This document shows positions 15,194 through 57,869 of a stretch of 64,000 nt of DNA, in pieces. Where the stretch lies: positions 1 to 64,000 of IMG/VR virus record IMGVR_UViG_3300027985_000843; one strand, given 5' to 3'. The notes beneath the pieces were generated by a model that ran no database searches, was not told the DNA's origin, and was given only the letters and a program-made list of their open reading frames with translations. The translations under genes were made by a program, and so were the position numbers. Within the stretch, counting starts at the first letter, position 1. Each line of letters starts with the position of its first letter.

Positions 15194-15694
15194 TCAATCT
15201 TCCATGTCTATGTCGAGGAATGGTATTCGGCGAGCCCCGGGAGAAGCAGCAGGAGCAACGGGCTTCGCTCCGAGCTTCTGCCGGCCCGGCCGCAACGTCG
15301 CCCAAGCCTCCTCCAGGGTGCCACTCTCGTATTCGTAGAATGTGGGGAATTCCTTGAGGGCCTGCTCAGCTCGGCACCGTAGGCACACGACCCCTCCCGG
15401 GGCGCAATCACACCCGATCCGATCAGCTATCGCAGACAGCAGCATGTGTAGGTCCTGAAAGGTCTCCTCACGGCTCACGCGGACTTCAGTTCGGTCCCCC
15501 GCTCGAAGCTCCTCCCCCACCACGATCTTCCGCCCTGTTGGGTACAGTTCGTGATGGCATCGGGGACAGTCTTCGAATCCCACATCGTCGTCTCGAACCC
15601 ATACCCGACCGCAGCCCGGGCAGTGCACCACCTCGGCCGGTAGTGTCTTGGTGGGAGACTTGGAGCGGCGAGCAACCACTTTCATGTCAGGCAT
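15194..15694 (-). CDS. Zinc-ribbon hypothetical protein
   Basis: HCPGCG...DCPRC; class II motif (15705-15711) 10 nt upstream. Confidence 0.65.
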   Translation of the reverse strand: MPDMKVVARRSKSPTKTLPAEVVHCPGCGRVWVRDDDVGFEDCPRCHHELYPTGRKIVVGEELRAGDRTEVRVSREETFQDLHMLLSAIADRIGCDCAPGGVVCLRCRAEQALKEFPTFYEYESGTLEEAWATLRPGRQKLGAKPVAPAASPGARRIPFLDIDMED

Positions 15695-16082
15695 CTTCAA
15701 TGTCTACACCACCGAGCCGGCTCCAGAAGGAAGAAACTTTGGCCTTGTGCGCCTCTTCCAGCTGCTGCATCCACTCAGGCAGGTTAATCACCCCGAAAGA
15801 ACACAGGCTGCTATCCCGACTCCGAACGATTCCGAGTTGGATGCTGCCCACATCGTTTGGCGCCCACATGACCAGGACGTGCTGGCGTGGGTTGGAACGG
15901 GCGGCCGCCCGCACCCTCTCGCGGGCAATCGCGGGAGGGTCCCCCGACCCGAGCCACCCACCCCGCCGCCCTGTGTAGGATGGCAGGATCGTGCACCACT
16001 CGTCGCCCCGAGCACTCAGTCGCTCAGTGCCCGCAGGCAAGTCGTCGACGGTCCCCTCGTAGAACGACAGGCTCAGAGGCAT
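15687..16082 (-). CDS. Hypothetical protein with C-terminal SFWSRL..VD motif
   Basis: Ends SSFWSRLGGVDIEDA. Confidence 0.6.
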   Translation of the reverse strand: MPLSLSFYEGTVDDLPAGTERLSARGDEWCTILPSYTGRRGGWLGSGDPPAIARERVRAAARSNPRQHVLVMWAPNDVGSIQLGIVRSRDSSLCSFGVINLPEWMQQLEEAHKAKVSSFWSRLGGVDIEDA

Positions 16083-16549
16083 GGCAGCCTCTCAGGCAGG
16101 CTTCGCTGAATTCGATGGCGAATATCAGGGGTCGTGTGCATCAGCCAGGGAATTCGCTCGGGGATGTCCTTCCACGAAGGGAACTCCACGAGAGGTGAGG
16201 TCGGTCCCCTATGCCGGTAGTGGGCCAGCCCCAAGTTGAAGGTCAGTTCGTTGTAGAACACTTCGATCTTGACCAGCGCGAGATACTCGCCGCCCGAACG
16301 GGGAAGCTGAAGGGCCCGCCGTCGGAGGAATGCTTTCGCTCCGCCCTCCTTGATGAGGGCGTAGCTCGCGTAGGGGAAGCTGAGGTGCCCCGCACCCTTC
16401 CTCAGGTGCGGAACCCACCCCTTGGGCGGGTCGTTCGGGAAATACTTGTCCGGACCCGGTCGCCAAAACATGAAGTTGGAGGAGTTGAGGAGGTCGGCCA
16501 AGGGCAAATCCCCCGCCGTTGTCAACCAATACCGTACTGGGATCATCAT
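16073..16549 (-). CDS. Hypothetical protein
   Basis: ORF in minus-strand operon. Confidence 0.55.
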   Translation of the reverse strand: MMIPVRYWLTTAGDLPLADLLNSSNFMFWRPGPDKYFPNDPPKGWVPHLRKGAGHLSFPYASYALIKEGGAKAFLRRRALQLPRSGGEYLALVKIEVFYNELTFNLGLAHYRHRGPTSPLVEFPSWKDIPERIPWLMHTTPDIRHRIQRSLPERLPCL

Positions 16550-16965
16550 GGCACCACCCGATAGCGAGAGGACCCTCCACACACTCGATTGCGGACGCTA
16601 GGGCGCCCGCCAAGCCCCCTTTTGGATTCCAGGGGTGTCCGAGGTCGTAGAGGGCTGTCGTCGCCCCTGAGGGCCGCCTGAGCGTCGAGAGTGTCGAACA
16701 GACTTCGGAGCTTCAGAATCTCTCGGTCATGATCATGGGAGGGCCGTTCACCTTTGAGCCAGAAGATCTGTTCGGGAGGGCTGCATCGGGAACACGGGCA
16801 GGGACGGCCGCCCCTTCTCTCGTGCCACCTGCCGTCAACCGTCTGCCAGATCTCATCCCCCGTCACGTCGTGTCTGATGGTGACGATGACGGGGTCGGTG
16901 ATGGTGGCCGACGTCGTGCTGGTGATGACGGTCGACGTTGTGTTCGTGGCGCTGTAGGGAATCAT
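16546..16965 (-). CDS. Hypothetical protein
   Basis: Thr-rich N-terminus, CPCSRC. Confidence 0.5.
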   Translation of the reverse strand: MIPYSATNTTSTVITSTTSATITDPVIVTIRHDVTGDEIWQTVDGRWHERRGGRPCPCSRCSPPEQIFWLKGERPSHDHDREILKLRSLFDTLDAQAALRGDDSPLRPRTPLESKRGLGGRPSVRNRVCGGSSRYRVVP

Positions 16966-16986
16966 TCGCGTTCTTCCAGAGCTAGG

Positions 16987-17820: not shown

Positions 17821-18393
17821 TCACAAGAAGATGGACGGATCTTCGCACAGTTGCTTGAGTTGTTCAACCTTCCACGGGTCCACGTCTTCCGCCGCCGGCA
17901 ATGGGGGCATCAGGAAGGGGCCCGCCGCCCGAGCGACAACGACCTCTTGAGCTGCGGCGCCTTGGTCCGATGTGGGAAACACCAGGGTATTCTTGAGCCC
18001 GGACACCTCCAGCATGTACTTGAGGTGCTCCTCGTCCTGTTCGCTGCCCGTCGGCCACCCCTCGTCGCGAGGCCACACACGGCCGTCCCACCCGTAGCGG
18101 TCCAGGGCGGCCACGATGTTGTTGAGCGTCTCCTCGAAGACGGGCAGCTCGACTTGCAAGGTACCCCCCGGCTTCGAATCGACGGGATTTTTGGGCAGGA
18201 GCAAGACGGACAGCATCACGAGAGGTGTTTCCGTGGCCTCTCTGACCCCAATCCACCCAAAGAGGGGGAGCGACAGGAATGTTCCCTTGACCGGCTCGGA
18301 CAGAACTTTGCCCACGGGCAGCATTCGGTGATCGACGCCGGTCGCACCCGTGGGACGGGCCATCTTGTTTTTTCGCTTGTCACTGATCTTCAT
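17821..18393 (-). CDS. Hypothetical protein
   Basis: Class II motif (18405-18411) 11 nt upstream. Confidence 0.65.
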   Translation of the reverse strand: MKISDKRKNKMARPTGATGVDHRMLPVGKVLSEPVKGTFLSLPLFGWIGVREATETPLVMLSVLLLPKNPVDSKPGGTLQVELPVFEETLNNIVAALDRYGWDGRVWPRDEGWPTGSEQDEEHLKYMLEVSGLKNTLVFPTSDQGAAAQEVVVARAAGPFLMPPLPAAEDVDPWKVEQLKQLCEDPSIFL

Positions 18394-18414: not shown

Positions 18415-19011
18415 TCAGTCGAAGTCGAAGTCGTCTTTACCCAACCGGTTCCAAGCTGTTTTAGGTTCGGGATTGACGCTCTGGTAAGTCGGGCGAGAAG
18501 CCAGACCGTTCAATGGAACCGAACCCCTGGGAGGTATCATTACCCCTCCGATGTACAAGGTCTGACCTGTCAGATTCTGAAGGTTCAGACCGTCGAAGCT
18601 TGTGGCCGCCGTGCCGTTGGCGATAGCCATCTGGGCTTCTGATATGTGCACCACGACTGGAGTGCTGTCGTTGGAGGCGGGAGTATCGCGATAGGGGTGG
18701 GATGAAGATACGTGAAAGACAGTGTCAGGCTCAGGGTCCCTGTCGTAGATGGGGCGAGCCCCATCAGGCAGCGAAGGGATGCCACCGGGTACGGGCCTGG
18801 GCCTGGGCCTGGGCTGGGTCTGACGACTATTTTCGACCTCGACAACGTGCCTCATGTGCTGTTGGCAGGCGAAACAGAAGTCGCCTCCAAACCTTCCGGT
18901 GGCATGAAGCGCCAGCGCTTCGGTGCCGTGTGTGCTCAGCCTGCTCCGGCATATGTCGCAGACGACATAGTACCTAACCGTGCCGTCTAGTGTCGCAGTC
19001 TCGATCGCCAT
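18415..19011 (-). CDS. Zinc-binding protein with C-terminal TAWxRL motif
   Basis: CDIC..CFAC, PRPRPRP linker, ends KTAWNRLGKDDFDFD. Confidence 0.65.
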   Translation of the reverse strand: MAIETATLDGTVRYYVVCDICRSRLSTHGTEALALHATGRFGGDFCFACQQHMRHVVEVENSRQTQPRPRPRPVPGGIPSLPDGARPIYDRDPEPDTVFHVSSSHPYRDTPASNDSTPVVVHISEAQMAIANGTAATSFDGLNLQNLTGQTLYIGGVMIPPRGSVPLNGLASRPTYQSVNPEPKTAWNRLGKDDFDFD

Positions 19012-19023: not shown

Positions 19024-19040
19024 TACACCAAATCGGTGTA
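19024..19040. promoter_or_regulatory. Back-to-back class II promoters
   Basis: TACACCA-aat-CGGTGTA; 12 nt to ATG 19011(-), 10 nt to ATG 19051(+). Confidence 0.8.
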
Positions 19041-19050: not shown

Positions 19051-19479
19051 ATGACGCAACACGTACAAGCGAGGCTCATCGATGATGCCCGGCGTGCTTT
19101 TCTTAATTCTCCTGCTCGTGGTGGACGACATCTACAACAACCAACGACACAAGTGAGCAACATGACCATCGAATGTGTCTTCAGCGGGCACAGCCTTCGA
19201 GAAGGCTTGTGCGACGGCAAGGCGACATCGTTCTTTCGCAGTGCCAAGGGGACCGTTTGGGCGCTGTGTACCTCCTGCGCTGATCAACACAAGCGGGTGA
19301 GCATCGGTCTGGCGAAGCAAGGCCGGTTGGCGATCAAGCCCCTCGCGGGAGCCACCTTCGACATACCCTTGGACGACCCCGAGACCCTCGCCATCTGGGA
19401 GAGTCAGGGACCGGAGACCGTCCAGGGTATCATCCAAGCTGTGGACTACGTGACCAAGCGGTCGGTGACCAAAGGCTAG
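19051..19479 (+). CDS. Hypothetical protein
   Basis: ORF after class II motif. Confidence 0.65.
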   Translation: MTQHVQARLIDDARRAFLNSPARGGRHLQQPTTQVSNMTIECVFSGHSLREGLCDGKATSFFRSAKGTVWALCTSCADQHKRVSIGLAKQGRLAIKPLAGATFDIPLDDPETLAIWESQGPETVQGIIQAVDYVTKRSVTKG

Positions 19480-19790
19480 CGGTCAGCCGCTGCCGCCGCG
19501 ACCAACAGCATCGCCTTGTTCTCGGCGATCTCTCGATCTACCTTCTCAATCTCGTCCCGAAGTGCCCGACCCGTCTTGCCGATGGCAGCCAGCTCGTTGC
19601 CGGCCACTCCCCGGGCCCGCCCCCGAAGCGCCTTGTTGGCTTCCTTCTTCAGGGCGTACGCCTTGCGAAGCGCGTCTAGCTCGACCTTGGCCTGCTCCAG
19701 GACCTTGGCACTCACAGTAGTGCCCCAGCAATGAGGGCACAGCACCATCTTGATTCTGCCGGCCTCACAATGTCCGCAAGTGTTCCGCAT
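19476..19790 (-). CDS. Zinc-finger coiled-coil early protein
   Basis: CGHC...CPHCWG; class I motif upstream. Confidence 0.7.
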   Translation of the reverse strand: MRNTCGHCEAGRIKMVLCPHCWGTTVSAKVLEQAKVELDALRKAYALKKEANKALRGRARGVAGNELAAIGKTGRALRDEIEKVDREIAENKAMLLVAAAAADR

Positions 19791-19837
19791 GTCCCTACTA
19801 CGATCGTTCTGGACGATAGTTCGGAAAAATCGGTGTA
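19791..19837. promoter_or_regulatory. Divergent class I (-) and class II (+) promoters
   Basis: Minus: CCGAAC(19824)-N16-CGTAGTA-GGGAC-ATG(19790). Plus: CGGTGTA(19831)-N10-ATG(19848). Confidence 0.85.
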
Positions 19838-20695: not shown

Positions 20696-21154
20696 TCAAG
20701 GGGTCATATCAAAGGGGTCATTGTCCAAGAGACGGCCCCAAGCTGTGCGGTCCCCTTGGAAGTCGTACTTGGGGTTGTAGTCCGACAGGACGGCCGCGAA
20801 CTTCGTACTGTGTCCGTCTTCTGTCAGGTGAACGGTGACTTCCCACAACCCTCGGTCCTGTCGGTGGAAAAGGGACACGCCCCCTTCGCGCCTTGTGACC
20901 AACTTGACCCGCTGGTTATGGTCGAGGGCCACTGTGGATCCCACCTGGAAAGACGCGACCCTTCGATCGTCGAATGGTCGAAGCAAGTACAGTTGCCAGT
21001 CCCGGTGCATGTCCAGCTTCTCGACCAGCCCCTCTGTCTCGTCCGTCGGACGTACGAGGTCCTTCGAGTCTCGATGAAGGATGACCACCCCAAGGGCACA
21101 CCTCAGGGAGGTGCTGTCCAAGCGGACGTACGCGGGCGATAGCTCAATCAGCAT
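20696..21154 (-). CDS. Hypothetical protein with C-terminal TAWxRL motif
   Basis: Ends RTAWGRLLDNDPFDMTP. Confidence 0.65.
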   Translation of the reverse strand: MLIELSPAYVRLDSTSLRCALGVVILHRDSKDLVRPTDETEGLVEKLDMHRDWQLYLLRPFDDRRVASFQVGSTVALDHNQRVKLVTRREGGVSLFHRQDRGLWEVTVHLTEDGHSTKFAAVLSDYNPKYDFQGDRTAWGRLLDNDPFDMTP

Positions 21155-21767
21155 CAGGACTCCGAATGAAGTCAGATCGTGTGAAGAGGGACCGAACAGT
21201 AAGCCCCGTCTCCGTTGTGATGCGGCCCACGCCGCCCTCCTTGCGGTCGACCACAACGCACACCCCCACGACATTGTGGCCGGCCTCACGCAGAGCTTGA
21301 ATGGCCCGAATGGTCGAGCCTCCCGTGGTGACCACATCCTCCAGGAGCACGACACGTGCACACGTGACATTTCCTTCCTCGTCCGCTCCGTACGGGAAAG
21401 GAGCTTCCACGATTTTACCCATGCCGTGCCCCTTTGGAGCTTTCCGGATGTAGAAGGCGGGTAGCAGCGGGATGTTCTGGGGGCCCCCGAGTTCACCCGT
21501 CAGAACACGATCGAGAGCTGACGTGTAGGATACAGCACTCGCGAGCGGGCACCCTCCCAGCTCCACGCCCGCAATAGCTTGAACGTTGTCGAACGTCTTG
21601 ACCATCTCGTACAGCAGACGCCCCAGCTTCCAGTGCCCATCAGCAGACAGGGCCACCGGCCGAACGTCGATGTAGAAGTCACTGGTCTTGCCAGAGGCAA
21701 GAGTGAACTCCCCTCGCTTGAACCCCCACAGCTTGAGCATCCCCAGAAGCGATTGTTTCATCTTCAT
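21144..21767 (-). CDS. pyrE: Orotate phosphoribosyltransferase
   Basis: GEFTLASGKTSDFYID, RKAPKGHG, PRPP-binding LLEDVVTTGGS, VVDR. Confidence 0.93.
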   Translation of the reverse strand: MKMKQSLLGMLKLWGFKRGEFTLASGKTSDFYIDVRPVALSADGHWKLGRLLYEMVKTFDNVQAIAGVELGGCPLASAVSYTSALDRVLTGELGGPQNIPLLPAFYIRKAPKGHGMGKIVEAPFPYGADEEGNVTCARVVLLEDVVTTGGSTIRAIQALREAGHNVVGVCVVVDRKEGGVGRITTETGLTVRSLFTRSDFIRSPDAD

Positions 21768-21783
21768 CTCCTTGCCTATCTGG

Positions 21784-21819
21784 TACACCGGGTCGGGTGC
21801 CGTGGGCAATCTTCTTGTG
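21784..21819. promoter_or_regulatory. Divergent class II (-) and class III (+) promoters
   Basis: TACACCG (21784-21790) toward pyrE; TCTTCTTGTG(21810)-N13-ATG(21833). Confidence 0.7.
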
Positions 21820-21832
21820 ACTTTCCCCAAGC

Positions 21833-22647: not shown

Positions 22648-22681
22648 GGCTCTACTACGTCAGGAACTAGGAGGAGTTCGG
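22648..22681 (-). promoter_or_regulatory. Class I promoter
   Basis: CCGAAC-N16-CGTAGTA-GAGCC-ATG(22647). Confidence 0.85.
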
Positions 22682-22978
22682 AAAGAGTTGCTTCTGGTAG
22701 GAGTGGAACACTTCGAGGACTTCCCGGGCCGATAGCGACTCGTCCACCTCGAAGCTCACCGACTTGGTTGCTACGACCACCGCGTAGCCCCTGCCGATCC
22801 ATACACCGGAAGTGACCTCCGGCCCAAGACGAACACGATGCAGCTCCTGAGCTGACAGGCCCATCCTGTACAGCTCAAGCTCGAACTTCACCCGGAACGC
22901 ATGGTGCTCCTGGATCCACTCGACGAGGGGTAGGCGATTCGAGATAGGTATTGTAGCCATTATCAATTCTTTGGTCAT
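22667..22978 (-). CDS. Hypothetical protein
   Basis: ATGA overlap with upstream ORF. Confidence 0.55.
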   Translation of the reverse strand: MTKELIMATIPISNRLPLVEWIQEHHAFRVKFELELYRMGLSAQELHRVRLGPEVTSGVWIGRGYAVVVATKSVSFEVDESLSAREVLEVFHSYQKQLFPNSS

Positions 22979-23472
22979 GGTTCATCTGGCTCCCCCTCAA
23001 TAATGTCCTCGGTTAAGCGTTCGAACGCCGTCGGGACGTGGTCGGGGATGTCGATGGGCTCCCACAGGATGTCCATCTGATCGGCGGCACACACGTACTG
23101 ACCTTCCAGGCCCGGCCGGCGAACGTTCTGGATGGTGATCTGCCCCCTGTGGGACTGCACCACCCGACCCTCTACATCTCGGTTGTCGTCTCCGACACCA
23201 ATGACCCATGAGCCTACGCTGAAAGGATCCTGTCCAGCCTCCAGAGTACCGTGAGATGCGAACCGCCTCAGGATCGGCAAAAGCTCCTGAGCATGGTCCC
23301 GCGTCAAGTGCATCCGGCCGTGCTGAATCTCCTCGCCCTCAAAGCTCACATCTACGCCAAGCCACACACAATCTTCCCCAGGAATGGAGGACTCCTGAAG
23401 ACTGCACAGGGCGCCATAGCGGTCTTGAAACTCAGCTCGCAGGAGCCCCTTCTTCGTCGGCTTGAACAACAT
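22975..23472 (-). CDS. Hypothetical phage protein with C-terminal TAFxRL motif
   Basis: F.DRYG..CSLQESS...CVWLG...RMHLTR; ends PTAFERLTEDIIEGEPDEP. Confidence 0.7.
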   Translation of the reverse strand: MLFKPTKKGLLRAEFQDRYGALCSLQESSIPGEDCVWLGVDVSFEGEEIQHGRMHLTRDHAQELLPILRRFASHGTLEAGQDPFSVGSWVIGVGDDNRDVEGRVVQSHRGQITIQNVRRPGLEGQYVCAADQMDILWEPIDIPDHVPTAFERLTEDIIEGEPDEP

Positions 23473-26185: not shown

Positions 26186-26207
26186 TACACCGGAGACCCC
26201 CGGTGTA
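26186..26207. promoter_or_regulatory. Back-to-back class II promoters
   Basis: TACACCG-N8-CGGTGTA. Confidence 0.8.
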
Positions 26208-26701
26208 TGATCGATTTCGTGCCTCTCACTTCCAATCAGATCACGGCCATCTATGCCCTAGATTGGCTGCTCGACGTGAGCGAAGACCGTCGCCGTTCGG
26301 GTCGCTCACTTGCGTGGGGCGCGGCCCTCATCAGACAAGCCCTGCGCCACCCAGGCAGACGTATCGCCTACTGTGACCACATCACCTCGATGGGCGGGGA
26401 GGAAGGGTACGAAAACCAACGCCGTATCATGTACCATGTCGTGCGCAACCTCATAGCCAGACACCCGGAACTCGACAGGCTCCAATGGGAGTTCCCCAAC
26501 ATGCGGTATTTTTGGCTGGCGTCTGATCAACTTGTGGACACCGACTGGATGCCGATGCCCCACGGCACAATGGACCCTGTCGTGTTGGGTCCCGAACCCG
26601 AGCCCCCACCTGAACCCGAGCTATCCGAACCGGCGTTCCCGGCCCCTACCTGCTGGGAGAGACTACTCGCGGAGAAAAAGGGCGACAACCCGTTCGATTG
26701 A
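26207..26701 (+). CDS. Hypothetical protein with C-terminal TCWxRL motif (likely GTG start at 26219)
   Basis: RRSGRS P-loop-like stretch, Pro-rich linker, ends PTCWERLLAEKKGDNPFD. Confidence 0.65.
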   Translation: MIDFVPLTSNQITAIYALDWLLDVSEDRRRSGRSLAWGAALIRQALRHPGRRIAYCDHITSMGGEEGYENQRRIMYHVVRNLIARHPELDRLQWEFPNMRYFWLASDQLVDTDWMPMPHGTMDPVVLGPEPEPPPEPELSEPAFPAPTCWERLLAEKKGDNPFD

Positions 26702-26863: not shown

Positions 26864-26873
26864 ATCTCTGGCG

Positions 26874-27516: not shown

Positions 27517-27540
27517 TACACCTGCCGGCCCGCCGGTGTA
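27517..27540. promoter_or_regulatory. Back-to-back class II promoters
   Basis: TACACCT-N10-CGGTGTA. Confidence 0.75.
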
Positions 27541-27549: not shown

Positions 27550-27912
27550 ATGGACAAGAAATGCGACGGCAAGGATTACTTGGTCCTCGGCAGTGTCGAT
27601 GAGACCGGCGGCCGCCGGTGCGTCATTCATCGGGCCGACCATCGGATAGAACAGGGCCGCGTCTTTCCGCTCCGAGATGGACAGCCCGTCCAACACGCCC
27701 TGGTGGTCAACGCGCCCGATGAGCACGGGCGGTTGGAAGTAGTGGCTGAGATCATCACCAATGGCCCTCCCAAGGTCGTATCCAACAAGTACCGCGAAGG
27801 CTGGGATCGAATCTTCGGCGCACCCGAGGAACCTTCCGACGACATCACCTCGATGATGATCAATCCCTGCTGCCATTACGGTCCCGACCTCGATCCGAAG
27901 GACATGAACTGA
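27550..27912 (+). CDS. Hypothetical protein
   Basis: AGGAGG SD; GPPKVVSNKYREGWDRIFG. Confidence 0.7.
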   Translation: MDKKCDGKDYLVLGSVDETGGRRCVIHRADHRIEQGRVFPLRDGQPVQHALVVNAPDEHGRLEVVAEIITNGPPKVVSNKYREGWDRIFGAPEEPSDDITSMMINPCCHYGPDLDPKDMN

Positions 27913-28442
27913 TGAAATGGCGAAAGGGCGACCTCGGACGGTTCGAATCCGAAGACAGGAACCTGCCTCGATTCGAAGTCATTCGAGCTGTGAAGGATGA
28001 GCACGTCGAGGTGTGGTACGGTGGGACCGATAAGACCACGCTCGTGCCGTGGAGCATCTTTTTCAAGGAGTGCACCAACCTGTGGAATTGGAAGCTCGAT
28101 GTGACCATCCCCCCATGGTTGGCCCCTGGTAGGGAGTTCACGGCCATGGGAAGCTTCAAGCAGGCGCTCATCAAATACAGTGTCGGACACCACATCGGGC
28201 ACAAGGTGTTCTACGGTACGTCGGAGCACGAGCACCTGTACGAGGCGGACAACGCCCGCCTCCTGGTTCGGAACATCCGGCACGACCATGCATCATGCCT
28301 CGTGCTCCCTGAGGGTCCTCTCGTGCTCGTGAGTATCGAAGATGCTGTTCGGTTTCGTCGAACCACTGCATGGTCCCGCCTGCTGGATACCAACGACATC
28401 TTCGAAGAGGAAGTTGACGATCTGGCGGAGATCTTTGGCTAG
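27912..28442 (+). CDS. Hypothetical protein with C-terminal TAWxRL motif
   Basis: Ends TTAWSRLLDTNDIFEEEVDDLAEIFG. Confidence 0.7.
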   Translation: MKWRKGDLGRFESEDRNLPRFEVIRAVKDEHVEVWYGGTDKTTLVPWSIFFKECTNLWNWKLDVTIPPWLAPGREFTAMGSFKQALIKYSVGHHIGHKVFYGTSEHEHLYEADNARLLVRNIRHDHASCLVLPEGPLVLVSIEDAVRFRRTTAWSRLLDTNDIFEEEVDDLAEIFG

Positions 28443-28633
28443 GCGTCCTTCAGTCTCTGAGCCCACGTCATGGGCTTCTTGCTCTCCTCCAGCTCAGCTT
28501 TCAACGACTGGTTTTCTTCTCGCAGGGCGCGGTTCTCCGCTTCCAAGGCGCGAACCCTGGTACGCAGGGCTTCGATCTGAGGTTGGAGATCCCTGCCGTC
28601 TTGCGGCCACAGGTCTAGGTCAACACAGGTCAT
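28439..28633 (-). CDS. Short coiled-coil protein with C-terminal TWAQRL motif
   Basis: Heptad repeats; ends KPMTWAQRLKDA. Confidence 0.65.
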   Translation of the reverse strand: MTCVDLDLWPQDGRDLQPQIEALRTRVRALEAENRALREENQSLKAELEESKKPMTWAQRLKDA

Positions 28634-28643
28634 GTTGTGAAAA

Positions 28644-28660
28644 TACACCGACTCGGTGTA
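28644..28660. promoter_or_regulatory. Back-to-back class II promoters (perfect palindrome)
   Basis: TACACCG-act-CGGTGTA. Confidence 0.8.
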
Positions 28661-29809: not shown

Positions 29810-30136
29810 ATGACAACAGACGACCACAAACCAGAAGCACCCCTGAGTAGTCCACCTGTGTCCCAGACGATTTTGAGGCTACGGCAGCAAATCGAAGAAG
29901 CTCGAACCCCAGAGGAGAAGATGGCGTTGATGCTGACCCTCGCGGCTCAGTTCGACCTTGAGCACAGCCTTCTCGACGACGGCTACAACGAGAACTACCA
30001 CAGCTACTTCGAAGAATACGAAGAAGCCCGCATGCACTTCCAGCATACGGCCCTTCGCCTCGCACGCCTGGCCCTCAGCGTGATCGATGACGAAGTGCCG
30101 AACACCTCGCCGCCTCCCCCCAAGAACGTCAACTAG
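29810..30136 (+). CDS. Hypothetical protein
   Basis: Helical acidic ORF. Confidence 0.55.
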   Translation: MTTDDHKPEAPLSSPPVSQTILRLRQQIEEARTPEEKMALMLTLAAQFDLEHSLLDDGYNENYHSYFEEYEEARMHFQHTALRLARLALSVIDDEVPNTSPPPPKNVN

Positions 30137-31020
30137 AAGTCATCGAAATCTCGACCGAGACGAGAGAAAGCCGTCGGTGCCGGCCCTCTGGGGGGCTCTG
30201 GCGGGGCCGGGCGCCTCGCAGGGGGCTCTGGCCGTCTCGGAGTCGAAGCGGGCCGTGTAGGGGGCTCTACGGCTCGAATAGGCCGAACAGCAGCGACCCT
30301 GGTCCCAGTGGCGTGGAACCTTCCGTCCTCACCCCTTTGACTGACCACGGTACCCCCGCCCCCGAAGCTCCCGCCGTATCGGCGGCCGTAATTCGGAGAG
30401 TCGTCGATGTCGATGTCCGGCATCGGCAGTTGGAATGGGCTGCCGGCACCCAGGGCTTCTTGGGCCTGCAAAGCTTCCCGGTTCATGAACAGGGACGACA
30501 GATCGGGGCTGGGAACAGAAGCAAGGTCATCAGCAAAGTTCGCATCCCCTCCAAGTTCCCAATCATCGTCGGTCGAGGTCGAGGTCGAAACCCCCGCTTG
30601 CTGCAACCGGGCGGCCCGATTCGCTATCGCAATGGCACGGGCGTCATGCTGCTCTACAATGGCAGCCGTGACCCGTTGTGTCGCCTGCGACAGAGCGTTG
30701 GCAACACTCTCGATGTTCGGTGTAAAGTCAATGTTGATGTCATCGGCGGCGAACGTAGTGAACTCCACCTCGAAGGGGACCTGCGCTTGTGATGCCTCAA
30801 CCTCGGCCAAAGGTTCGTAGGTGGGCATCTTGGGCCTGCCAAAGGTGGACGCGAATTGGGAGGACTGGACAGCCCTCATTTCCCTCACTGCGCCCGCAGA
30901 CAAGAGCATCTCCGGAGTGAGATCAGGGAGGACAGCTTCTCTGGCAGCACTGCCGTTCCGCTGACGCTCTGCCTCGACAAGTTCTTGGAGTCGTTTTTCG
31001 AGTTCGGAAGCCATGGTCAC
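30133..31020 (-). CDS. Low-complexity protein with C-terminal TAFxRL motif
   Basis: Pro/Arg-rich linker, ends PTAFSRLGRDFDDF. Confidence 0.7.
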   Translation of the reverse strand: MTMASELEKRLQELVEAERQRNGSAAREAVLPDLTPEMLLSAGAVREMRAVQSSQFASTFGRPKMPTYEPLAEVEASQAQVPFEVEFTTFAADDINIDFTPNIESVANALSQATQRVTAAIVEQHDARAIAIANRAARLQQAGVSTSTSTDDDWELGGDANFADDLASVPSPDLSSLFMNREALQAQEALGAGSPFQLPMPDIDIDDSPNYGRRYGGSFGGGGTVVSQRGEDGRFHATGTRVAAVRPIRAVEPPTRPASTPRRPEPPARRPAPPEPPRGPAPTAFSRLGRDFDDF

Positions 31021-34220: not shown

Positions 34221-35021
34221 ATGACTCCGGAGACTGCTGCTCTAGCGACCCTTGCCGTCATCATAGGCCCTGCGCTGCTCCTGCCCGCCTATCGTATGAT
34301 CAAGCGTCGACAAAAGGCACGTCGGGCAGCTCAGAAGGTCGAACCCCCGAAAGAGGTTCCCAAGAAATCACCCGAGGTGTCGCTTGAGCCTATCGGGGGT
34401 ATCTACTACACCCGCCAGCAGATTTCTTTGGCCCACAGGGTCGTACCCTCGGCATGCATCGTCGGGATCGAAGGGCTGTCCCTTTATCTATCGGAGGGCC
34501 CTGGAACTATGGAAGTCACCCCCACAGACATCAATCTTCTCCGAACGGCCGTGTCGAACGGGTGGCTCACCAAGATCGACTCGGATTTGCCTCCACAACA
34601 AGTACCTGGAATTCGAGCCAGGCTGTCTGAAATAGGCGAAACCTTCCGACGTCGAATTGACGCCTTCCAGCGTCAATTCGATAGCGGATTGGATGCATTG
34701 CGTCGGGCTGAATCTCTGTCGGACGTGGAGCACATTGTCTACACTCCTGGAGAGGCACGCATCTACCGGGCAACCCGGGACTTCGCGCTTCGATCCGTGG
34801 AAGGCGCTACAGTGCACATTCAGAAGGGCGAGCTTCTCCGGTTCGACGGTATGACGGTCACCACTCAACACCATCAGCAAGACGCTCCGGGCCTTCGAGG
34901 GGCCGTACGCAATGGGTGGATCCGGCTTGAACCCGAAGCTGTGTCGATTCGTCAGCCGGCTCAGCCATCTCGAACAGCGACCCAGCGACTCCTCGATGAC
35001 GACGTGTGGGAGGATGCATGA
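34221..35021 (+). CDS. N-terminal TM protein with C-terminal TATxRL motif
   Basis: TM, duplicated LRxAVxNGW[LI] module, ends RTATQRLLDDDVWEDA. Confidence 0.7.
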   Translation: MTPETAALATLAVIIGPALLLPAYRMIKRRQKARRAAQKVEPPKEVPKKSPEVSLEPIGGIYYTRQQISLAHRVVPSACIVGIEGLSLYLSEGPGTMEVTPTDINLLRTAVSNGWLTKIDSDLPPQQVPGIRARLSEIGETFRRRIDAFQRQFDSGLDALRRAESLSDVEHIVYTPGEARIYRATRDFALRSVEGATVHIQKGELLRFDGMTVTTQHHQQDAPGLRGAVRNGWIRLEPEAVSIRQPAQPSRTATQRLLDDDVWEDA

Positions 35022-35371
35022 GCGACCTGATTTTTGGCTTCTTGATCGCAGTCATGGGCTTCCTATTCCTCGCAGCCGTGGTCAGGTGCGTTCTGCTGAC
35101 CCGGCAAAACCTGCTACAAGCGCAGCAGATGGATAAGCTTCGGGATGAAAACCAGCGGCTTCAAGAGTCAGCTGAGCAGCTACGAGACTCAAACGATCGG
35201 CTGAGGAGTCGCATGTTCGATCTTCGCCGCCGAAGTCGTGATCTGGCAACCAAACCGTGTACAGGGGGCGACGCGATGAAGTATCCGTCCGTCGAGACGG
35301 TCCAGCTGAAGCCGAAGCCCATCAAAACAGCCACTGCCCGCCTCCTAGATGGTGATGTGTGGGCGAAATGA
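35018..35371 (+). CDS. TM plus coiled-coil protein with C-terminal TATxRL motif
   Basis: Ends KTATARLLDGDVWAK. Confidence 0.7.
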   Translation: MSDLIFGFLIAVMGFLFLAAVVRCVLLTRQNLLQAQQMDKLRDENQRLQESAEQLRDSNDRLRSRMFDLRRRSRDLATKPCTGGDAMKYPSVETVQLKPKPIKTATARLLDGDVWAK

Positions 35372-35826
35372 ACCCTGATATCCTCGTGGATGCCCTGGCT
35401 GTGTTCGTCCTTTTGGCGGCCTTTGCCGTAGTGAAGTGGTCTCGCAAGTGGCTCAATCAAATCACCAGCCTTAATAACCAAGTCGGCGGTCTTGAGAGCC
35501 AGATTAGGATCCTCAAGGAAACGGTCCGCAGCAGGGAACAAGATCTCAACATCCTCAAAGAGGTCTCTGAGCATCGATGCTCCGAGTTCGAAGCCCGGCG
35601 GGCCGATCAAGCAGTGGAAAACGATCGACTGCGAAGGTACATTGCGTCTTTGCAGCGAGAAATTCAATCATTAAAGCGAGTCGACCAACACCAGATGAAT
35701 GTGCGGCACGACGCAAACGTGCCTCGCGAACCCCAACCACCCTCCGAACCACCACCGTCAGTCTTTCAACGTCTCGAACGCGATGATATATGGGACGCTG
35801 GCCCATGGGACACCGATCCGTCATGA
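35368..35826 (+). CDS. TM plus coiled-coil protein with C-terminal SVFxRL motif
   Basis: Ends PPSVFQRLERDDIWDAGPWDTDPS. Confidence 0.7.
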   Translation: MNPDILVDALAVFVLLAAFAVVKWSRKWLNQITSLNNQVGGLESQIRILKETVRSREQDLNILKEVSEHRCSEFEARRADQAVENDRLRRYIASLQREIQSLKRVDQHQMNVRHDANVPREPQPPSEPPPSVFQRLERDDIWDAGPWDTDPS

Positions 35827-43602: not shown

Positions 43603-43639
43603 TACACCGGTACTACGTCCGTCCGGTCAACAAGTTCGG
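43603..43639 (-). promoter_or_regulatory. Tandem class I plus class II promoters
   Basis: CCGAAC-N16-CGTAGTA-c-CGGTGTA on minus strand, upstream of the GHKL gene. Confidence 0.8.
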
Positions 43640-43644
43640 AAAAA

Positions 43645-50601: not shown

Positions 50602-50618
50602 TACACCAGACCGGTGTA
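50602..50618. promoter_or_regulatory. Back-to-back class II promoters
   Basis: TACACCA-gac-CGGTGTA, each 10 nt from an ATG (50591, 50629). Confidence 0.85.
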
Positions 50619-51083: not shown

Positions 51084-51427
51084 AACGTCGAGCTTTTCTT
51101 CAGGTGCTTGCTGTCACAGCAGTGCCGCTGGTGGGGTCTTTCCAAGGCGACACTGAGGACGCCTACATTCAGCTCTACGACGGCGACAAGGCGGTGACCA
51201 AGCCGCTACCCACCAAGTTCAGGTGGAACAGCAAGATGACGGTCACGGTCCAACCCTCACAACCTATCCGAGTGACCCGTGCTGTCCTGTACTCCCCCAA
51301 GGTGGGCCGAAGGAATCACGACATCGACCCCCTCATCATCAAGCCTTCGACTGAATTAACGGTGACTTGGGAGATCGGCGCGGTTTCCTCAAAAGATTTT
51401 CCGAACTCCTCCCGACGGCGAGCGTAG
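51080..51427 (+). CDS. Putative Tat-exported protein
   Basis: GTG start after AGGAG: MKRRAFLQVLAVTAVPLVG, a twin-arginine RRxFL signal. Confidence 0.6.
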   Translation: MKRRAFLQVLAVTAVPLVGSFQGDTEDAYIQLYDGDKAVTKPLPTKFRWNSKMTVTVQPSQPIRVTRAVLYSPKVGRRNHDIDPLIIKPSTELTVTWEIGAVSSKDFPNSSRRRA

Positions 51428-51434
51428 TAGGGAC
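51401..51434 (+). promoter_or_regulatory. Class I promoter
   Basis: CCGAAC-N16-CGTAGTA-GGGAC-ATG(51435). Confidence 0.85.
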
Positions 51435-55603: not shown

Positions 55604-56208
55604 TCTTCCTCGCCCTCGTCCATCAGCTCAAAGGCTGCGTCTTGAAGAGCTTCGTCCAGCTTCCTCGCCGCTGGGCCAGTCTTGCTCGCCACGTACTTCG
55701 ACAGGTCGCGAATGGTGAATCGAGGATCCACGAACAGCACGTCCCAGTCACCATCCCATGTGCCCACGCCCGCTCCCTGGTGTTCCATGTAGTACAGGAA
55801 GCCGGCGCCGCCGCGCAGGTCCATCATCACCTCGACCACGTGCTCTGGCTTCTTGGCACTGCGGAGAGGGCCGACGCCCATCTTGAACAGGCCGATGTTC
55901 TTCTTCACCCAGTCGAGGAGCGCCTTCTCCACGGTCTTCTCGTAGGCTTCGGCGGCGGCCTCCACCTCATGAGGGACATCGGGGCTCCGAGCATCGCCGC
56001 CAACGGACATGACCTCTGTCTCCAGCAGACCCGTGAGCGTAGCGTTGTCAGACAGCTTGGCCGTTCGATCCAACTTGCCTTCGACCATGTAGGCGAGACG
56101 GATGAGGTTGCGGGCGACAGCTTTCCGGCTCGTGGGCTGACTGCGCTGGAAGGCGAGCATGCGAGCAAGTTGGCCCTGAACCTCGTCGATAGAAGCGACT
56201 TTGTGCAT
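55600..56208 (-). CDS. Putative late protein with MHKVAS leader
   Basis: N-terminus similar to 63363-63761; class III-like TCTGTTTATG (56233-56242) and GAGG SD. Confidence 0.7.
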   Translation of the reverse strand: MHKVASIDEVQGQLARMLAFQRSQPTSRKAVARNLIRLAYMVEGKLDRTAKLSDNATLTGLLETEVMSVGGDARSPDVPHEVEAAAEAYEKTVEKALLDWVKKNIGLFKMGVGPLRSAKKPEHVVEVMMDLRGGAGFLYYMEHQGAGVGTWDGDWDVLFVDPRFTIRDLSKYVASKTGPAARKLDEALQDAAFELMDEGEED

Positions 56209-56384
56209 GAGGGTTCCTCTCCGACCACGAACCATAAACAGAAAGTTGGCCGTCTCGTCTCAGGAGCCTATCGTGGCGGCATGATGATCCAAATCACACT
56301 GCCCGCCGACGCCACCGCGCTCGAAGTCATGTACCTCAAAAATTCCCTGCCGCTTGGTTGGCGACTCCGGTGTATCCCTGAGGT

Positions 56385-56756
56385 ATGTGGGACCAAGGCA
56401 CCCTGGAACGAACAACCAAAGCAGCTGACTTCAGGGCTTCCTTGTGGGCCAACGCCACAGGGTGCAAACCCGTCCGGTTGAGGTTCCGTAGCAGTTTCCT
56501 CGCCTTTGTGCACGGCTACGGAGGCACCTTCAACCCACCAGAGGAAAACGTCATTGTCATCGACAGCCTCGACAGCCAGTCGATGAAGGTGGGCAGGAAG
56601 GCGGGCATGTCGACCTTGGAGGCGTCCAAGATGGCTTTCGCGGTGTTCGGCGACAAGCTCGGGCGCACCAAAGCGATAAACGAAGCGTTCAAGCTCATCT
56701 ACGGCACACCGCGAGAACACCCTCTGCACCTCATCGAGAACCCCCATGGCACTTGA
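56385..56756 (+). CDS. Hypothetical protein
   Basis: CGGTGTA(56368)-N10-ATG. Confidence 0.6.
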   Translation: MWDQGTLERTTKAADFRASLWANATGCKPVRLRFRSSFLAFVHGYGGTFNPPEENVIVIDSLDSQSMKVGRKAGMSTLEASKMAFAVFGDKLGRTKAINEAFKLIYGTPREHPLHLIENPHGT

Positions 56757-57156
56757 AGACACTGCGAAAGAATACACCTCCGTTCAGACCGTGAAGGCCG
56801 TCCACATCGAGAAGAAGGGGACTTGCGCCATCTACGGGACCAAGATCGAGATCACTGCCGACGACATGTTCGTCTTTCAGCTGGATGGGCAGGTCTACGT
56901 CATGCCAGGGGAGCGGTTCCGGAGGCGATTCCAAAGCTCTCCCCAAGAACGACCGCAGGATTTCCGAGCCCTCCGAGACTGCGTGTCCGTCATCAAAGGG
57001 GATTCGGAGATCAACGAGTGCTACTACGAGGTCCACGTGGCAAACCGCCGGATTTGGGACAAGGGTGGCCTCCGGAGTGTCGTGCCCGACGAGGCCCAAG
57101 CAGTTGCTGAGAACATCCGCAACGACCTGGTGAGGGCTGCCATGAGGCAATCATGA
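56746..57156 (+). CDS. Hypothetical protein
   Basis: Operon overlaps. Confidence 0.6.
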   Translation: MALEDTAKEYTSVQTVKAVHIEKKGTCAIYGTKIEITADDMFVFQLDGQVYVMPGERFRRRFQSSPQERPQDFRALRDCVSVIKGDSEINECYYEVHVANRRIWDKGGLRSVVPDEAQAVAENIRNDLVRAAMRQS

Positions 57157-57869
57157 AGCCGCAGAACATCAAGGACGCGGACAAGACCATCCAGTCCGTC
57201 AACGCGTACATCCAAGAGCACGAGATCAAGTTCGTCCTCGGCGTCGACGAGGCAGGCCGAGGAACGTGGGCCGGCCCCCTCGTGGCGGCCGCCGTCGCAG
57301 TGCAGCCGAACTGGACCCCGCCGGCCGGCCTCGGAGACTCCAAGGGACTCACCCGCGCCACCATCAGCAAGCTGTGGCAGAAATACTACCGCACCACGCG
57401 GCATGGTATTGGGGTGGTGCACGCCCCCGAAGTCGATTCCATGGGCCTCAACCCTGCCCAGGCACACGCGCAGGGACAAGCTATCCAAGAGGCTCTCAAG
57501 CACACACCCTCTTGGGTGCTGACCCGGGAGATCCTCGTGGTGGTCGACGGCAATCTACCGCCCGTTCTCGACAAGAGCCGAATTGGCAAGCTCATGCTCA
57601 TCCCCAAGGCAGACGCCCTCATCCCAGCCGTCTCTCTTGCGTCGGTCTTCGCCAAGATGACGCAGCTCAACTTCATGACGGAGTATGACGACAAATACCC
57701 GCAATACGGCTTCGGCCAGCATGCGGGCTACGGAGGCAGTCAGAAACATCGAGATGCCCTTGAGCAGTTCGGTGTATGTGACATTCATCGCCGAAGCTTT
57801 GGCCCGATCAAGAAGATCCTCGCCAAGGCTCAAAACCCCGAAAGGTCGTGGGAGCTGCTAGACGACTAA
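57153..57869 (+). CDS. rnhB: Ribonuclease HII
   Basis: GVDEAGRG.WAGP, DSK.L, VDGN, KAD...AVS.ASV.AK, YGF..H.GY, HRRSF. Confidence 0.95.
   Translation: MKPQNIKDADKTIQSVNAYIQEHEIKFVLGVDEAGRGTWAGPLVAAAVAVQPNWTPPAGLGDSKGLTRATISKLWQKYYRTTRHGIGVVHAPEVDSMGLNPAQAHAQGQAIQEALKHTPSWVLTREILVVVDGNLPPVLDKSRIGKLMLIPKADALIPAVSLASVFAKMTQLNFMTEYDDKYPQYGFGQHAGYGGSQKHRDALEQFGVCDIHRRSFGPIKKILAKAQNPERSWELLDD

What the first reader, a model, noticed from the sequence alone, without database searches (positions are those of the whole stretch)
15687..57869. A shared C-terminal peptide tag ([TS]-[AWC]-[WFT]-x-R-L-x-x-D-D-hydrophobic) on about 12 unrelated proteins: candidate phage docking/addressing system
Seen, as C-termini: SFWSRLGGVDIEDA (15687), TAWNRLGKDDFDFD (18415), TAWGRLLDNDPFDMTP (20696), TAFERLTEDIIE.. 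(22975), TCWERLLAEKKGDNPFD (26207), TAWSRLLDTNDIF.. (27912), TWAQRLKDA (28439), TAFSRLGRDFDDF (30133), TATQRLLDDDVWEDA (34221), TATARLLDGDVWAK (35018), SVFQRLERDDIWD.. (35368), and more weakly RSWELLDD on RNase HII (57153). The carriers are otherwise dissimilar (zinc fingers, coiled coils, TM-anchored, disordered, an enzyme). The motif usually follows a Pro-rich linker. Codons differ between copies (ACAGCTTGGAACCGGTTG, ACGGCGTTCGAACGCTTA, ACCTGCTGGGAGAGACTA, ACTGCATGGTCCCGCCTG), so conservation is at protein level. Most carriers lie in class II transcription units. Inference: a short linear motif that recruits many cargo proteins to one hub, such as a phage clamp or polymerase, a compartment or scaffold, a protease adaptor or a membrane site. 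Known analogies are the SSB C-tail, PIP boxes and the T4 gp45-binding tails. I do not recognise this motif as described.
Basis: partly seen in the sequence, partly recalled or inferred. Interest (0 to 1): 0.92.

Follow-up and report, generated by a model that had tools for sequence, protein, structure and literature searches.

The report
Shared C-terminal docking peptide, huge phage
At least 15 otherwise unrelated proteins of an uncultured 372-kb phage end in the same roughly 13-residue peptide, which is also the hallmark of a widespread uncharacterised phage protein family, so it looks like a portable address tag for one still-unidentified partner, most plausibly the phage's own ClpX unfoldase.

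Summary
Eleven ORFs between 15.7 and 35.8 kb end in [TS]-x-[WFYT]-x-R-L-(L)-acidic-[FWIV]-acidic. All strict-core matches in six frames are ORF C-termini. The conservation is at protein level, not DNA level, and the carriers share nothing detectable besides the tail. The RNase HII tail does not fit the motif.

The window is the first 64 kb of a 371,739-bp IMG/VR contig, of which I read 42%. That turned up four more carriers.

- One carrier, at contig 72.8 kb, belongs to a roughly 165-aa family with 160 clusters in public data. The family has no Pfam, PHROG, NCBIfam or PDB match. Its tail consensus is P-x-T-[AV]-[YF]-D-[RH]-L-L-D-D-D-[FY].
- That family lies downstream of a phage ClpX, separated by about 3 to 6.5 kb, in all 5 contigs long enough to show it. 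It is followed by a CxxCxxCC protein, directly in 7 of 8 loci.
- The other carriers checkable against the closest relative are missing from it, although their flanking genes are conserved there. They look like lineage-specific gains.

The best reading is a portable docking peptide. The partner is not shown. The top candidate is the zinc-binding domain of the phage ClpX, by analogy with the SspB tether (about 0.35). I judge this a new variant of a known kind, and well worth a bench test.

The parts
15687..16082 (-). Carrier, 131 aa. Tail at 15690-15731 (SFWSRLGGVDIEDA*).
   Evidence: 18.3 bits. No Pfam or PHROG match.
18415..19011 (-). Carrier, 198 aa, with an N-terminal Cys-rich (zinc-finger-like) region. 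Tail at 18418-18459 (TAWNRLGKDDFDFD*).
   Evidence: 22.2 bits. Top hit of an HMM trained only on the outside family (15.2 bits).
20696..21154 (-). Carrier. The public collection calls this gene as 152 aa (P0001), whereas the longest ORF runs to 21496. Tail at 20699-20746 (TAWGRLLDNDPFDMTP*).
   Evidence: (22.3 bits).
22975..23472 (-). Carrier, 165 aa. Residues 1-78 match phrog_3849 (unknown function). Tail at 22978-23031 (TAFERLTEDIIEGEPDEP*).
   Evidence: (17.6 bits).
26207..26701 (+). Carrier, 164 aa, with a Pro-rich linker. Tail at 26648-26698 (TCWERLLAEKKGDNPFD*).
   Evidence: (19.5 bits).
27912..28442 (+). Carrier, 176 aa. Tail at 28365-28439 (TAWSRLLDTNDIFEEEVDDLAEIFG*).
   Evidence: 19.5 bits.
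28439..28648 (-). Carrier, 69 aa, coiled coil. Tail at 28442-28468 (TWAQRLKDA*). This is the weakest accepted instance.
   Evidence: leucine-zipper-like hits; 13.4 bits.
30133..31020 (-). Carrier, 295 aa, with a very Pro-rich C-terminal linker. Tail at 30136-30174 (TAFSRLGRDFDDF*).
   Evidence: (18.0 bits).
34221..35021 (+). Carrier, 266 aa. It has an N-terminal TM helix followed by a K/R cluster, so the C-terminus is inferred to be cytoplasmic. Tail at 34974-35018 (TATQRLLDDDVWEDA*).
   Evidence: KD19 2.0 at residue 5; 21.7 bits.
35006..35371 (+). Carrier, 121 aa: N-terminal TM helix plus coiled coil (weak DivIC-like hit). Tail at 35327-35368 (TATARLLDGDVWAK*).
   Evidence: KD19 2.87; 20.6 bits.
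35359..35826 (+). Carrier, 155 aa: N-terminal TM helix, coiled coil and Pro-rich linker. Tail at 35758-35823 (SVFQRLERDDIWDAGPWDTDPS*).
   Evidence: KD19 2.54; 22.9 bits.
57153..57869 (+). RNase HII ending in RSWELLDD*.
   Evidence: Pfam RNase_HII. No tail-HMM hit and it lacks the invariant Arg. The orthologue ends KRSWELPDE*.

Best explanation
The tail is [TS]-x-aromatic-x-[RH]-L-L, followed by an acidic run that contains one aromatic residue. I read it as a portable protein-protein docking peptide.

It is ancestral to a core family of roughly 165-aa proteins in this lineage of huge phages. That family consists of tandem SH3/Tudor-like barrels, a basic/Pro linker and the tail. In this phage the tail has also been placed on at least 14 unrelated, mostly lineage-specific small proteins, so all of them would address the same partner.

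The most likely partner is the N-terminal zinc-binding domain of the phage-encoded ClpX. The tail would then work like the C-terminal XB peptide of SspB, as a tether at the end of a flexible linker. That tether would bring the carrier to a phage ClpX(P) machine. The carrier would either be a substrate for timed removal, or an adaptor that delivers a bound host or phage target.

Shown: the motif, its C-terminal restriction, protein-level selection, conservation across phages, unrelated carriers, and the ClpX gene with its features.

Inferred: that the tail binds anything at all, that the partner is ClpX, and the outcome of binding. My confidence is about 0.8 that this is a docking peptide for a common partner, and about 0.35 that the partner is the phage ClpX.
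For: The motif is real and strictly C-terminal. The codons differ between copies, and the carriers are unrelated.

Conservation outside this genome:
- The orthologue in a related phage with 51% GC is 65% identical and keeps the tail.
- In the family of 160 clusters, 101 of 149 members match a loose tail pattern, with consensus T69/S22, Y65/F29, R71/H22, L76, L57, then D/E.
- An HMM trained only on that outside family ranks window carriers first.

The phage ClpX is 464 aa as an ORF and 425 aa as called. It has zf-C4_ClpX, AAA_2 and D2-small domains and aligns to E. coli ClpX at E = 2e-98. It keeps GYVG and the ClpP-docking loop (MGF), but the RKH loop is replaced. All 120 closest homologues also lack RKH, which implies an altered substrate choice.

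The order ClpX ... DUF1848 ... tail family ... CxxCxxCC holds in all 5 contigs long enough to show it: own, L249, L278, L279 and L280.

The architecture of globular domain, Pro-rich or basic linker and terminal peptide matches the SspB design as known from the literature. A phage protein that steers host ClpXP has a precedent in T5 Gp00X (PMC11806420).
Against: No binding evidence of any kind exists. Synteny in a conserved phage core block is weak evidence of a functional link.

- The tail sequence does not resemble the SspB XB peptide (LRVVK). It is acidic rather than basic.
- The family profile shows no similarity to E. coli SspB (probability 0.5%).
- No SspB appears among the 50 Foldseek PDB matches listed.
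- The 252-kb relative carries one tail-bearing protein and a ClpX, but they are not near each other.
- No ClpP was seen in the 42% of the genome that I read.
- AF2 gives the tail helix of the core family pLDDT 76-89. That may mean it packs on its own domain rather than hanging free.
- Three carriers are membrane-anchored, which the ClpX idea does not predict.
Confidence: 0.35

Rival explanations
1. The tail is a docking peptide, but its partner is another product of the conserved block. One candidate is the CxxCxxCC (PF03692, FliB/YkgJ-like) protein encoded just downstream of the core family, possibly an enzyme that recognises tail-bearing substrates. The other is the SH3/Tudor-like domain of the core family itself. 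In that case the core protein would be the hub, its own tail a cis pseudo-ligand, and the accessory proteins would plug in in trans.
For: - The CxxCxxCC gene follows the family gene in all 8 loci read. It is directly adjacent in 7, often with overlapping stop and start, and separated by one 62-aa gene in L277.
- The AF2 model of the family (pLDDT 93.7) keeps the linker and tail helix at pLDDT 76-89, which is unusual for a free tail.
- The fold is built of SH3/Tudor/KOW-like barrels, which are classic peptide-binding modules.
Against: Mutual-information analysis of 82 family members shows no excess covariation between tail and domain: 9 of 1551 pairs have z > 3, against 0.63% overall. Power is low. 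No coordinates were available, so I could not inspect contacts. Adjacent genes need not encode proteins that bind each other's tails.
Confidence: 0.2
2. The tail is a replisome-type acidic tail. Like the C-terminal tails of bacterial SSB or of T7 gp2.5 and gp4, it would dock carriers on the phage PolA polymerase, on an SSB-like protein or on host SSB-interacting proteins. That would localise accessory factors to replicating phage DNA.
For: - The second half of the motif is acidic plus aromatic (DDFDFD, NDPFD, DFDDF, DDVWED).
- The phage has a T7-like PolA/DnaB/primase module at 87-95 kb.
- Part of the carriers are co-oriented with a gene that ends in the SSB tip DDIPF.
- Membrane-anchored coiled-coil carriers recall phi29 p16.7 (from established knowledge).
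Against: - PolA, DnaB, primase and the SNF2 helicase lack the tail.
- The tail is not anchored at the very C-terminus. Zero to 19 residues follow the aromatic residue, unlike the SSB or T7 tails, where the terminal Phe carboxylate matters.
- The invariant T-x-aromatic-x-R-L half has no counterpart in SSB or T7 tails.
- The phage already uses a separate DDIPF tail.
Confidence: 0.12
3. The tail is a virion or capsid targeting signal. Diverse accessory (for example anti-defence) proteins would be loaded into the head and injected, as with the T4 capsid-targeting sequence on hypervariable internal proteins, or the C-terminal cargo-loading peptides of encapsulins.
For: - The carriers are small, diverse and lineage-specific, and they sit among anti-defence-like genes.
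- They share only a terminal peptide behind a flexible linker. That is the logic of the T4 internal-protein locus and of encapsulin cargo (from established knowledge).
Against: - Three carriers have N-terminal TM anchors.
- Part of the carriers share a strand with replication-type genes and none lies in the putative structural region.
- The core family sits in a nucleotide/DNA-metabolism block next to ClpX.
- The T4 signal is N-terminal and is cleaved off.
Confidence: 0.1
4. The tail is a recognition tag for a modifying enzyme rather than a docking site, for example C-terminal amino-acid ligation by the phage R2K ATP-grasp enzyme, in the manner of RimK or TTL.
For: An R2K-clade ATP-grasp gene is present in the window. 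Such enzymes are predicted to be peptide ligases acting on proteins (PMC7824862). Acidic C-terminal tails are the substrates of RimK and of the tubulin ligases (from established knowledge).
Against: No R2K gene was listed in the called-gene tables of the family-bearing loci from other phages, which cover roughly 4 to 21 kb each, whereas the tail is universal in the family. The ends of the tails are variable, which suits a terminal ligase poorly.
Confidence: 0.08
5. This is not a functional motif. It would instead be a leftover of one duplicated 3' cassette, a paralogue family, an overlapping DNA signal, or chance.
For: All but one of the carriers lie in a single genome, and 11 of them within 21 kb. 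One tail-bearing gene has a tail-less paralogue next door.
Against: - The DNA of the tails is only 38% identical, with synonymous changes.
- Shuffles and 867 kb of control DNA give nothing comparable.
- The carriers are unrelated.
- The tail is under purifying selection across 160 clusters.
Confidence: 0.03

Closest known systems
SspB adaptor and its C-terminal XB peptide, which tethers to the ClpX zinc-binding domain
   Same: The architecture is the same: a folded domain, a flexible linker and a short terminal peptide. The core family is also about 165 aa long. A ClpX with an intact zinc-binding domain is encoded in the same conserved block.
   Different: The tail sequence is unlike LRVVK, being acidic rather than basic. 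There is no sequence similarity to SspB and no fold similarity among the listed matches. Binding is untested. Here the peptide sits on many unrelated proteins, not on one adaptor.
Bacterial SSB C-terminal tip (DDDIPF) and the T7 gp2.5/gp4 acidic tails
   Same: These are acidic C-terminal tails with an aromatic residue, on proteins with flexible linkers, and they serve as a common handle for partner proteins.
   Different: In SSB, one protein carries the tail and many partners bind it. Here many proteins carry the tail. The T-x-aromatic-x-R-L half has no equivalent in those tails. The tail is not fixed at the very C-terminus. The phage has a separate protein that ends in DDIPF.
T4 capsid-targeting sequence on hypervariable internal proteins, and encapsulin cargo-loading peptides
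   Same: Unrelated, fast-evolving proteins share only a short terminal address peptide. In encapsulins that peptide is C-terminal and follows a Pro/Gly/Ala-rich linker.
   Different: The T4 signal is N-terminal and cleaved. There is no sequence similarity. Some carriers are membrane-anchored, and the core family lies in a DNA-metabolism/ClpX block, not a head module.
PIP box, beta-clamp-binding motif, and T4/RB69 gp45-binding tails
   Same: These are short C-terminal hydrophobic and acidic peptides that dock many proteins on one ring. Tail ends such as DDFDFD resemble the RB69 polymerase tail.
   Different: There is no conserved Gln. The Leu-to-aromatic spacing is +5/+6 rather than +3/+4. No clamp gene was seen. 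The replisome is of the PolA/DnaB type, and its proteins lack the tail.

Membership tests
SspB-type ClpX-tethering (XB) peptide | A short peptide at the extreme C-terminus, behind a flexible linker | tested here: met
   The T residue lies 9-25 residues from the stop. The linker is 17% Pro against a 5.7% background, concentrated in about half of the carriers.
SspB-type ClpX-tethering (XB) peptide | Consensus L-R-V-V-K (hydrophobic and basic) | tested here: not met
   The tail is x-R-L-L followed by an acidic run. Only the R-aliphatic-aliphatic core is shared.
SspB-type ClpX-tethering (XB) peptide | Carrier homologous to SspB (PF04386 fold) | tested here: not met
   hhalign of the family profile against E. 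coli SspB gives probability 0.5%. No SspB appears among the 50 Foldseek PDB matches listed.
SspB-type ClpX-tethering (XB) peptide | Binds the ClpX N-terminal zinc-binding domain | not testable with these tools
   A ClpX with zf-C4_ClpX is present, but no complex prediction or assay is available.
ssrA-like C-terminal ClpX degron (C-motif 1) | Terminal non-polar residues with a free carboxylate (LAA-COOH), read by the RKH loops | tested here: not met
   The tail ends vary (DFD, MTP, EDA, WAK, IFG, DEP, DPS). The phage ClpX lacks RKH.
SSB C-terminal tip | Ends in D-D-D-I-P-F-COOH on an OB-fold SSB | tested here: not met
   No carrier ends in IPF. A different window protein (13605-14102) does.
PIP box / beta-clamp-binding motif | Qxx[LIM]xx[FY][FY] or QL[SD]LF | tested here: not met
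   Only one tail has a Gln before RL, and the aromatic residue lies 5-6 residues after the Leu.
PIP box / beta-clamp-binding motif | A sliding clamp encoded or used by the replisome | tested here: inconclusive
   No clamp Pfam family is listed for the stretches annotated (window, the extra loci and contig 76.7-107 kb). The replisome is PolA/DnaB/primase. Most of the genome was not annotated.
T4-type capsid targeting sequence | An N-terminal peptide of about 10 aa ending at a prohead-protease site | tested here: not met
   The motif is exclusively C-terminal.
Encapsulin-type cargo-loading peptide | A C-terminal peptide after a flexible linker, binding the inside of an HK97-fold shell | tested here: inconclusive
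   The position and linker fit. The sequence is unlike the known loading peptides, and shell binding is not testable here.

The most novel reading that the evidence does not exclude
A lineage of huge phages runs its own programmable proteolysis or remodelling system. A phage ClpX that has lost the ssrA-reading RKH loops would recognise a dedicated C-terminal address peptide. This phage has fused that peptide to a growing, fast-turning-over set of unrelated small proteins. These would be either self-destructing early effectors or SspB-like adaptors that hand host targets, such as defence proteins, to the phage unfoldase. That would be a bacterial-virus counterpart of the viral adaptors that hijack degradation machinery in eukaryotes.
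Probability: 0.25. Interest if true: 0.9.

Novelty: new variant of a known kind. Interest (0 to 1): 0.72.

Why it matters
Short linear motifs that wire many proteins to one hub are well known in eukaryotes and their viruses. In phages they are barely charted, apart from SSB tails, clamp-binding tails and the T4 capsid signal.

This case offers three things together:
- a clean, statistically solid motif;
- a conserved 'founder' family of unknown function, found in at least 160 sequence clusters of uncultured huge phages;
- a natural experiment in which one phage has spread the peptide to about 14 new genes.

Identifying the partner would assign a cellular address to more than a dozen dark-matter genes at once. 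It would give a function to a widespread uncharacterised family. If the partner is the phage ClpX, it would also explain why huge phages carry RKH-less ClpX genes, and it would provide a compact, orthogonal degradation or recruitment tag for synthetic biology.

Tried and rejected
- **GenBank phages.** There is no DNA or protein match, so no annotated relative exists there.
- **Tail alignment as a locus query.** It was too degenerate for the tool.
- **Word-indexed protein search with the last 43 residues of one carrier.** It found only itself.
- **Word-indexed search with the core family protein.** It gave only 3 hits. The exhaustive HMM search was needed.
- **IMG/VR pattern TAWxRLLDxD.** It gave one new true instance (L005) and 5 chance hits.
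- **IMG/VR pattern TxYDRLLxD.** It gave chance hits only.
- **200 kb around homologues of the 735-aa protein in 19 metagenome contigs.** No tails were found, so the motif is not a property of the wider group that shares that gene.
- **Paralogy of the carriers.** Rejected.
- **A DNA-level repeat.** Rejected.
- **Similarity of the family to SspB.** None.
- **Foldseek.** Only matches to single SH3/Tudor-like barrels, with no full-length analogue.
- **Covariation between tail and domain.** No enrichment.
- **Literature searches.** No description of this motif turned up.

Full report
**Source of the window.** The window is positions 1-64000 of IMGVR_UViG_3300027985_000843, a 371,739-bp contig with about 59% GC. 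It matches nothing in GenBank phages. Most of its proteins have no Pfam or PHROG family. The families that are recognisable point to an early or accessory region: D12 methyltransferase, RNase HII, LigT/Acb1-like, Pribosyltran with AAA_28, GmrSD_N, SocA_Panacea, R2K ATP-grasp and a GT51 transglycosylase.

- A six-frame scan recovers all eleven quoted tails, each 9-25 codons before a stop in an ORF of 65-287 upstream codons.
- The strict core T[AC][WFT].RL occurs 8 times in six frames, always at an ORF C-terminus. The looser [TS].[WFT].RL gives 11 C-terminal hits, against 2.1 on average (maximum 7) in 200 codon shuffles.
- An HMM of 14 tails scores true instances at 13-24 bits. In 867 kb of unrelated viral DNA the best score is 10.9 bits, on junk ORFs.
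- No internal hit of 7 bits or more exists in the 155 kb of this genome that I read.
- The DNA under the tails is 38% identical per column and differs at synonymous sites.
- The 20 residues before the motif are three-fold enriched in proline.
- Three consecutive carriers (34221, 35006, 35359) have an N-terminal hydrophobic helix followed by Lys/Arg, so their tails should face the cytoplasm like the others (this is an inference from the positive-inside rule).
- With tails removed, the carriers show no significant similarity to each other.
- The RNase HII ending (RSWELLDD) lacks the invariant Arg and is not detected by the HMM, so I exclude it, although its orthologue keeps a similar ending.

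**More of the same genome.** A promoter-like motif, TTCCGAAC-N16-CGTAGTAG, has 11 sites in the window against 0.36 expected. It served as a handle to pull further pieces of the contig from IMG/VR. Gene look-ups added more. In total I read 155.5 kb, or 42% of the contig: positions 1-97,294 plus four blocks between 291 and 372 kb. Four more carriers appeared:

| Contig position | Length | Tail |
|---|---|---|
| 72.8 kb | 172 aa (ORF; called 166) | TAYGRLSSDDDFDFDMED |
| 82.4 kb | 84 aa | DAWSRLLHDDPKLDDFEDMLNG |
| 303.7 kb | 430 aa | SAMARLLDEDLFEPV |
| 324.9 kb | 150 aa | SSWARLKNGPDFDF |

The carrier at 324.9 kb has a tail-less paralogue next door (E = 4e-8). The replisome proteins (SNF2 helicase, DnaB, primase, PolA) and the large ORFs at 97-107 kb have no tail.

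**Related phages.**
- A 252-kb IMG/VR contig that shares a 45%-identical 807-aa protein with the window has one carrier, ending TAWERLLDQDPED.
- The closest relative is a 282,752-bp JGI contig and a 45-kb ENA contig, with 51% GC and a ClpX that is 79% identical. It is syntenic with the window.
- The orthologue of the 72.8-kb carrier in that relative is 65% identical and keeps the tail: PKTTFDRLVDNNFDDLFDLED.
- The window carriers, by contrast, are missing from the relative. Orthologues of their neighbours lie side by side there at 48-83% identity. These neighbours are 26663-26881, 22667-22978, 21144-21830, 19476-19790, 19051-19479, 17821-18393, 14581-15192 and 32022-33278.
- The 84-aa carrier at 82.4 kb is likewise an insertion between conserved genes.
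- About 200 kb around homologues of the 735-aa protein in 19 other metagenomic contigs contain no tails.

The tail is therefore old on one protein and recently multiplied in this phage.

**The founder family.** A profile of the two orthologues, searched against 1.84 billion representative proteins, finds 160 clusters. Nearly all are 155-180 aa long and align into the tail.
- Their C-termini read ...P-[RPK]-T-[AV]-[YF]-D-[RH]-L-L-[DE]-D-D, followed by more acidic residues and one Phe or Tyr. Among the 101 members that match a loose pattern, the counts are T/S 91, Y/F/W 97, R/H 93 and L/I 93.
- The family has no Pfam, PHROG, NCBIfam or PDB sequence match.
- AlphaFold2 with 122 sequences gives a confident model, with pLDDT 93.7 and pTM 0.80. 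It has an all-beta domain (residues 1-123), a helix at 131-139 and a short tail helix at 150-155. pLDDT is 89, 76 and 67 over the last three blocks.
- Foldseek finds no full-length analogue, only single SH3/Tudor/KOW-like barrels.
- Profile comparison of the beta domain with every accessory carrier gives probabilities below 1%, so the accessory carriers are not hidden paralogues.
- An HMM trained only on the outside family still ranks window carriers first. The window tails prefer Trp where the family has Tyr.

**Candidate partners.**

*Phage ClpX.* In every contig long enough to judge (own, L249, L278, L279, L280), the family gene lies about 3 to 6.5 kb downstream of a phage ClpX gene and a DUF1848 gene.
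- The phage ClpX has the C4 zinc-binding domain, Walker motifs, the GYVG pore loop and an [I/M/L]GF ClpP-docking loop.
- Its RKH loop is replaced. The same holds for all 120 closest homologues.
- ClpX is the one protein in the sampled genome known, as a class, to read short C-terminal peptides and to be tethered by the terminal peptide of an adaptor built as domain, linker and peptide (SspB; from established knowledge).
- Jumbo-phage ClpX genes have been noted before, without a function (PMC7824862). A phage protein that steers host ClpXP has been reported for T5 (PMC11806420).
- This is why I rank ClpX first. The support is architectural and syntenic only. The tail does not resemble LRVVK, the family is not SspB-like, and no ClpP was seen.

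*The CxxCxxCC neighbour.* A CxxCxxCC (PF03692) gene follows the family gene in all 8 loci read. It is directly adjacent in 7 of them, often with overlapping stop and start.

*The founder's own barrels.* The AF2 confidence on the tail hints at cis packing. Covariation between tail and domain is not enriched, but power is low.

*The replisome.* The PolA replisome or an SSB-like protein could be the partner, by analogy with T7 and SSB.

*A head-loading site.* A head-loading site could be the partner, by analogy with T4 or encapsulins. The TM-anchored carriers and the gene context speak against this.

**Comparison with known systems.** The logic is that of SSB tails, XB tethers, clamp-binding tails and capsid or encapsulin address peptides. 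The sequence, the founder family and the many-carrier expansion match none of them (see the membership table). I found no description of the motif in the literature searched.

**Verdict.** This is a real, strongly selected, portable C-terminal peptide. That it is a docking motif is very likely. Its partner is unresolved, with the phage ClpX as the leading and readily testable candidate.

Noticed in passing
window 3234-3265, 3681-3712, 4471-4502, 4789-4820, 10868-10899, 13014-13045, 19795-19826(-), 22652-22683(-), 43610-43641(-), 51399-51430, 60018-60049: A promoter-like motif, TTCCGAAC-N16-CGTAGTAG, of the ECF-sigma type (AAC ... CGT). There are 11 sites against 0.36 expected. At most sites it ends only a few nucleotides before a start codon, which suggests very short leaders or none. 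It also occurs elsewhere on this contig and on the 241-kb contig IMGVR_UViG_3300032136_000001.
   Followed up: partly
window 19024-19040, 26186-26207, 27517-27540, 28644-28660, 34185-34210, 50602-50618: Six exact palindromes, TACACC-N5-12-GGTGTA, against 0.01 expected. Five lie in divergent intergenic regions and one overlaps the start of the 28439-28648 carrier. Five of the six flank carrier-containing units.
   Followed up: partly
window 13605-14102 (-): A 165-aa protein ends in ...EDIDDIPF, the classic bacterial SSB C-terminal tip, yet it has no Pfam, NCBIfam or PDB sequence match. It is either a very divergent SSB or a mimic of the SSB tail.
   Followed up: partly
window 35790-37514 (+), 39787-40923 (+): A 574-aa phage protein has a GT51 peptidoglycan glycosyltransferase domain (E = 1e-45), directly after the three TM plus coiled-coil carriers. 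A protein with PG_binding_1 lies 2 kb further on. A peptidoglycan-synthesis enzyme is unusual in a phage.
   Followed up: no
L119:10176-11567 (-) = contig 77122-78513: The phage ClpX has its zinc-binding domain, GYVG and an MGF ClpP-docking loop, but the RKH loop is replaced. All 120 closest homologues (51-85% identity), several of them on contigs of 180-440 kb, also lack RKH.
   Followed up: partly
L273 compared with window 14.5-45 kb: The closest relative keeps the neighbours of the carriers at 48-83% identity but lacks the carriers themselves. The carrier region of this phage is therefore a hotspot of recent gene gain.
   Followed up: partly
L056:828-1280 and L056:1220-1795 (contig about 324.9-325.9 kb): A tail-bearing gene and a tail-less paralogue (30% identity, E = 4e-8) sit side by side. 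This pair could show how the tail is gained or lost.
   Followed up: no
window 1355-1430 (+): ARAGORN calls a suppressor-type tRNA (anticodon TTA) inside ORF 1279-2349. It may be a false positive or a sign of stop-codon reassignment.
   Followed up: no
L274:1701-9975 (contig about 87-95.6 kb) and L274:11288-12886: A T7-like replication module (SNF2 helicase, DnaB, DnaG-type zinc ribbon, family A polymerase) and a classic-clade AAA ATPase of 532 aa (Cdc48/PAN/FtsH-like) lie next to the ClpX block.
   Followed up: no
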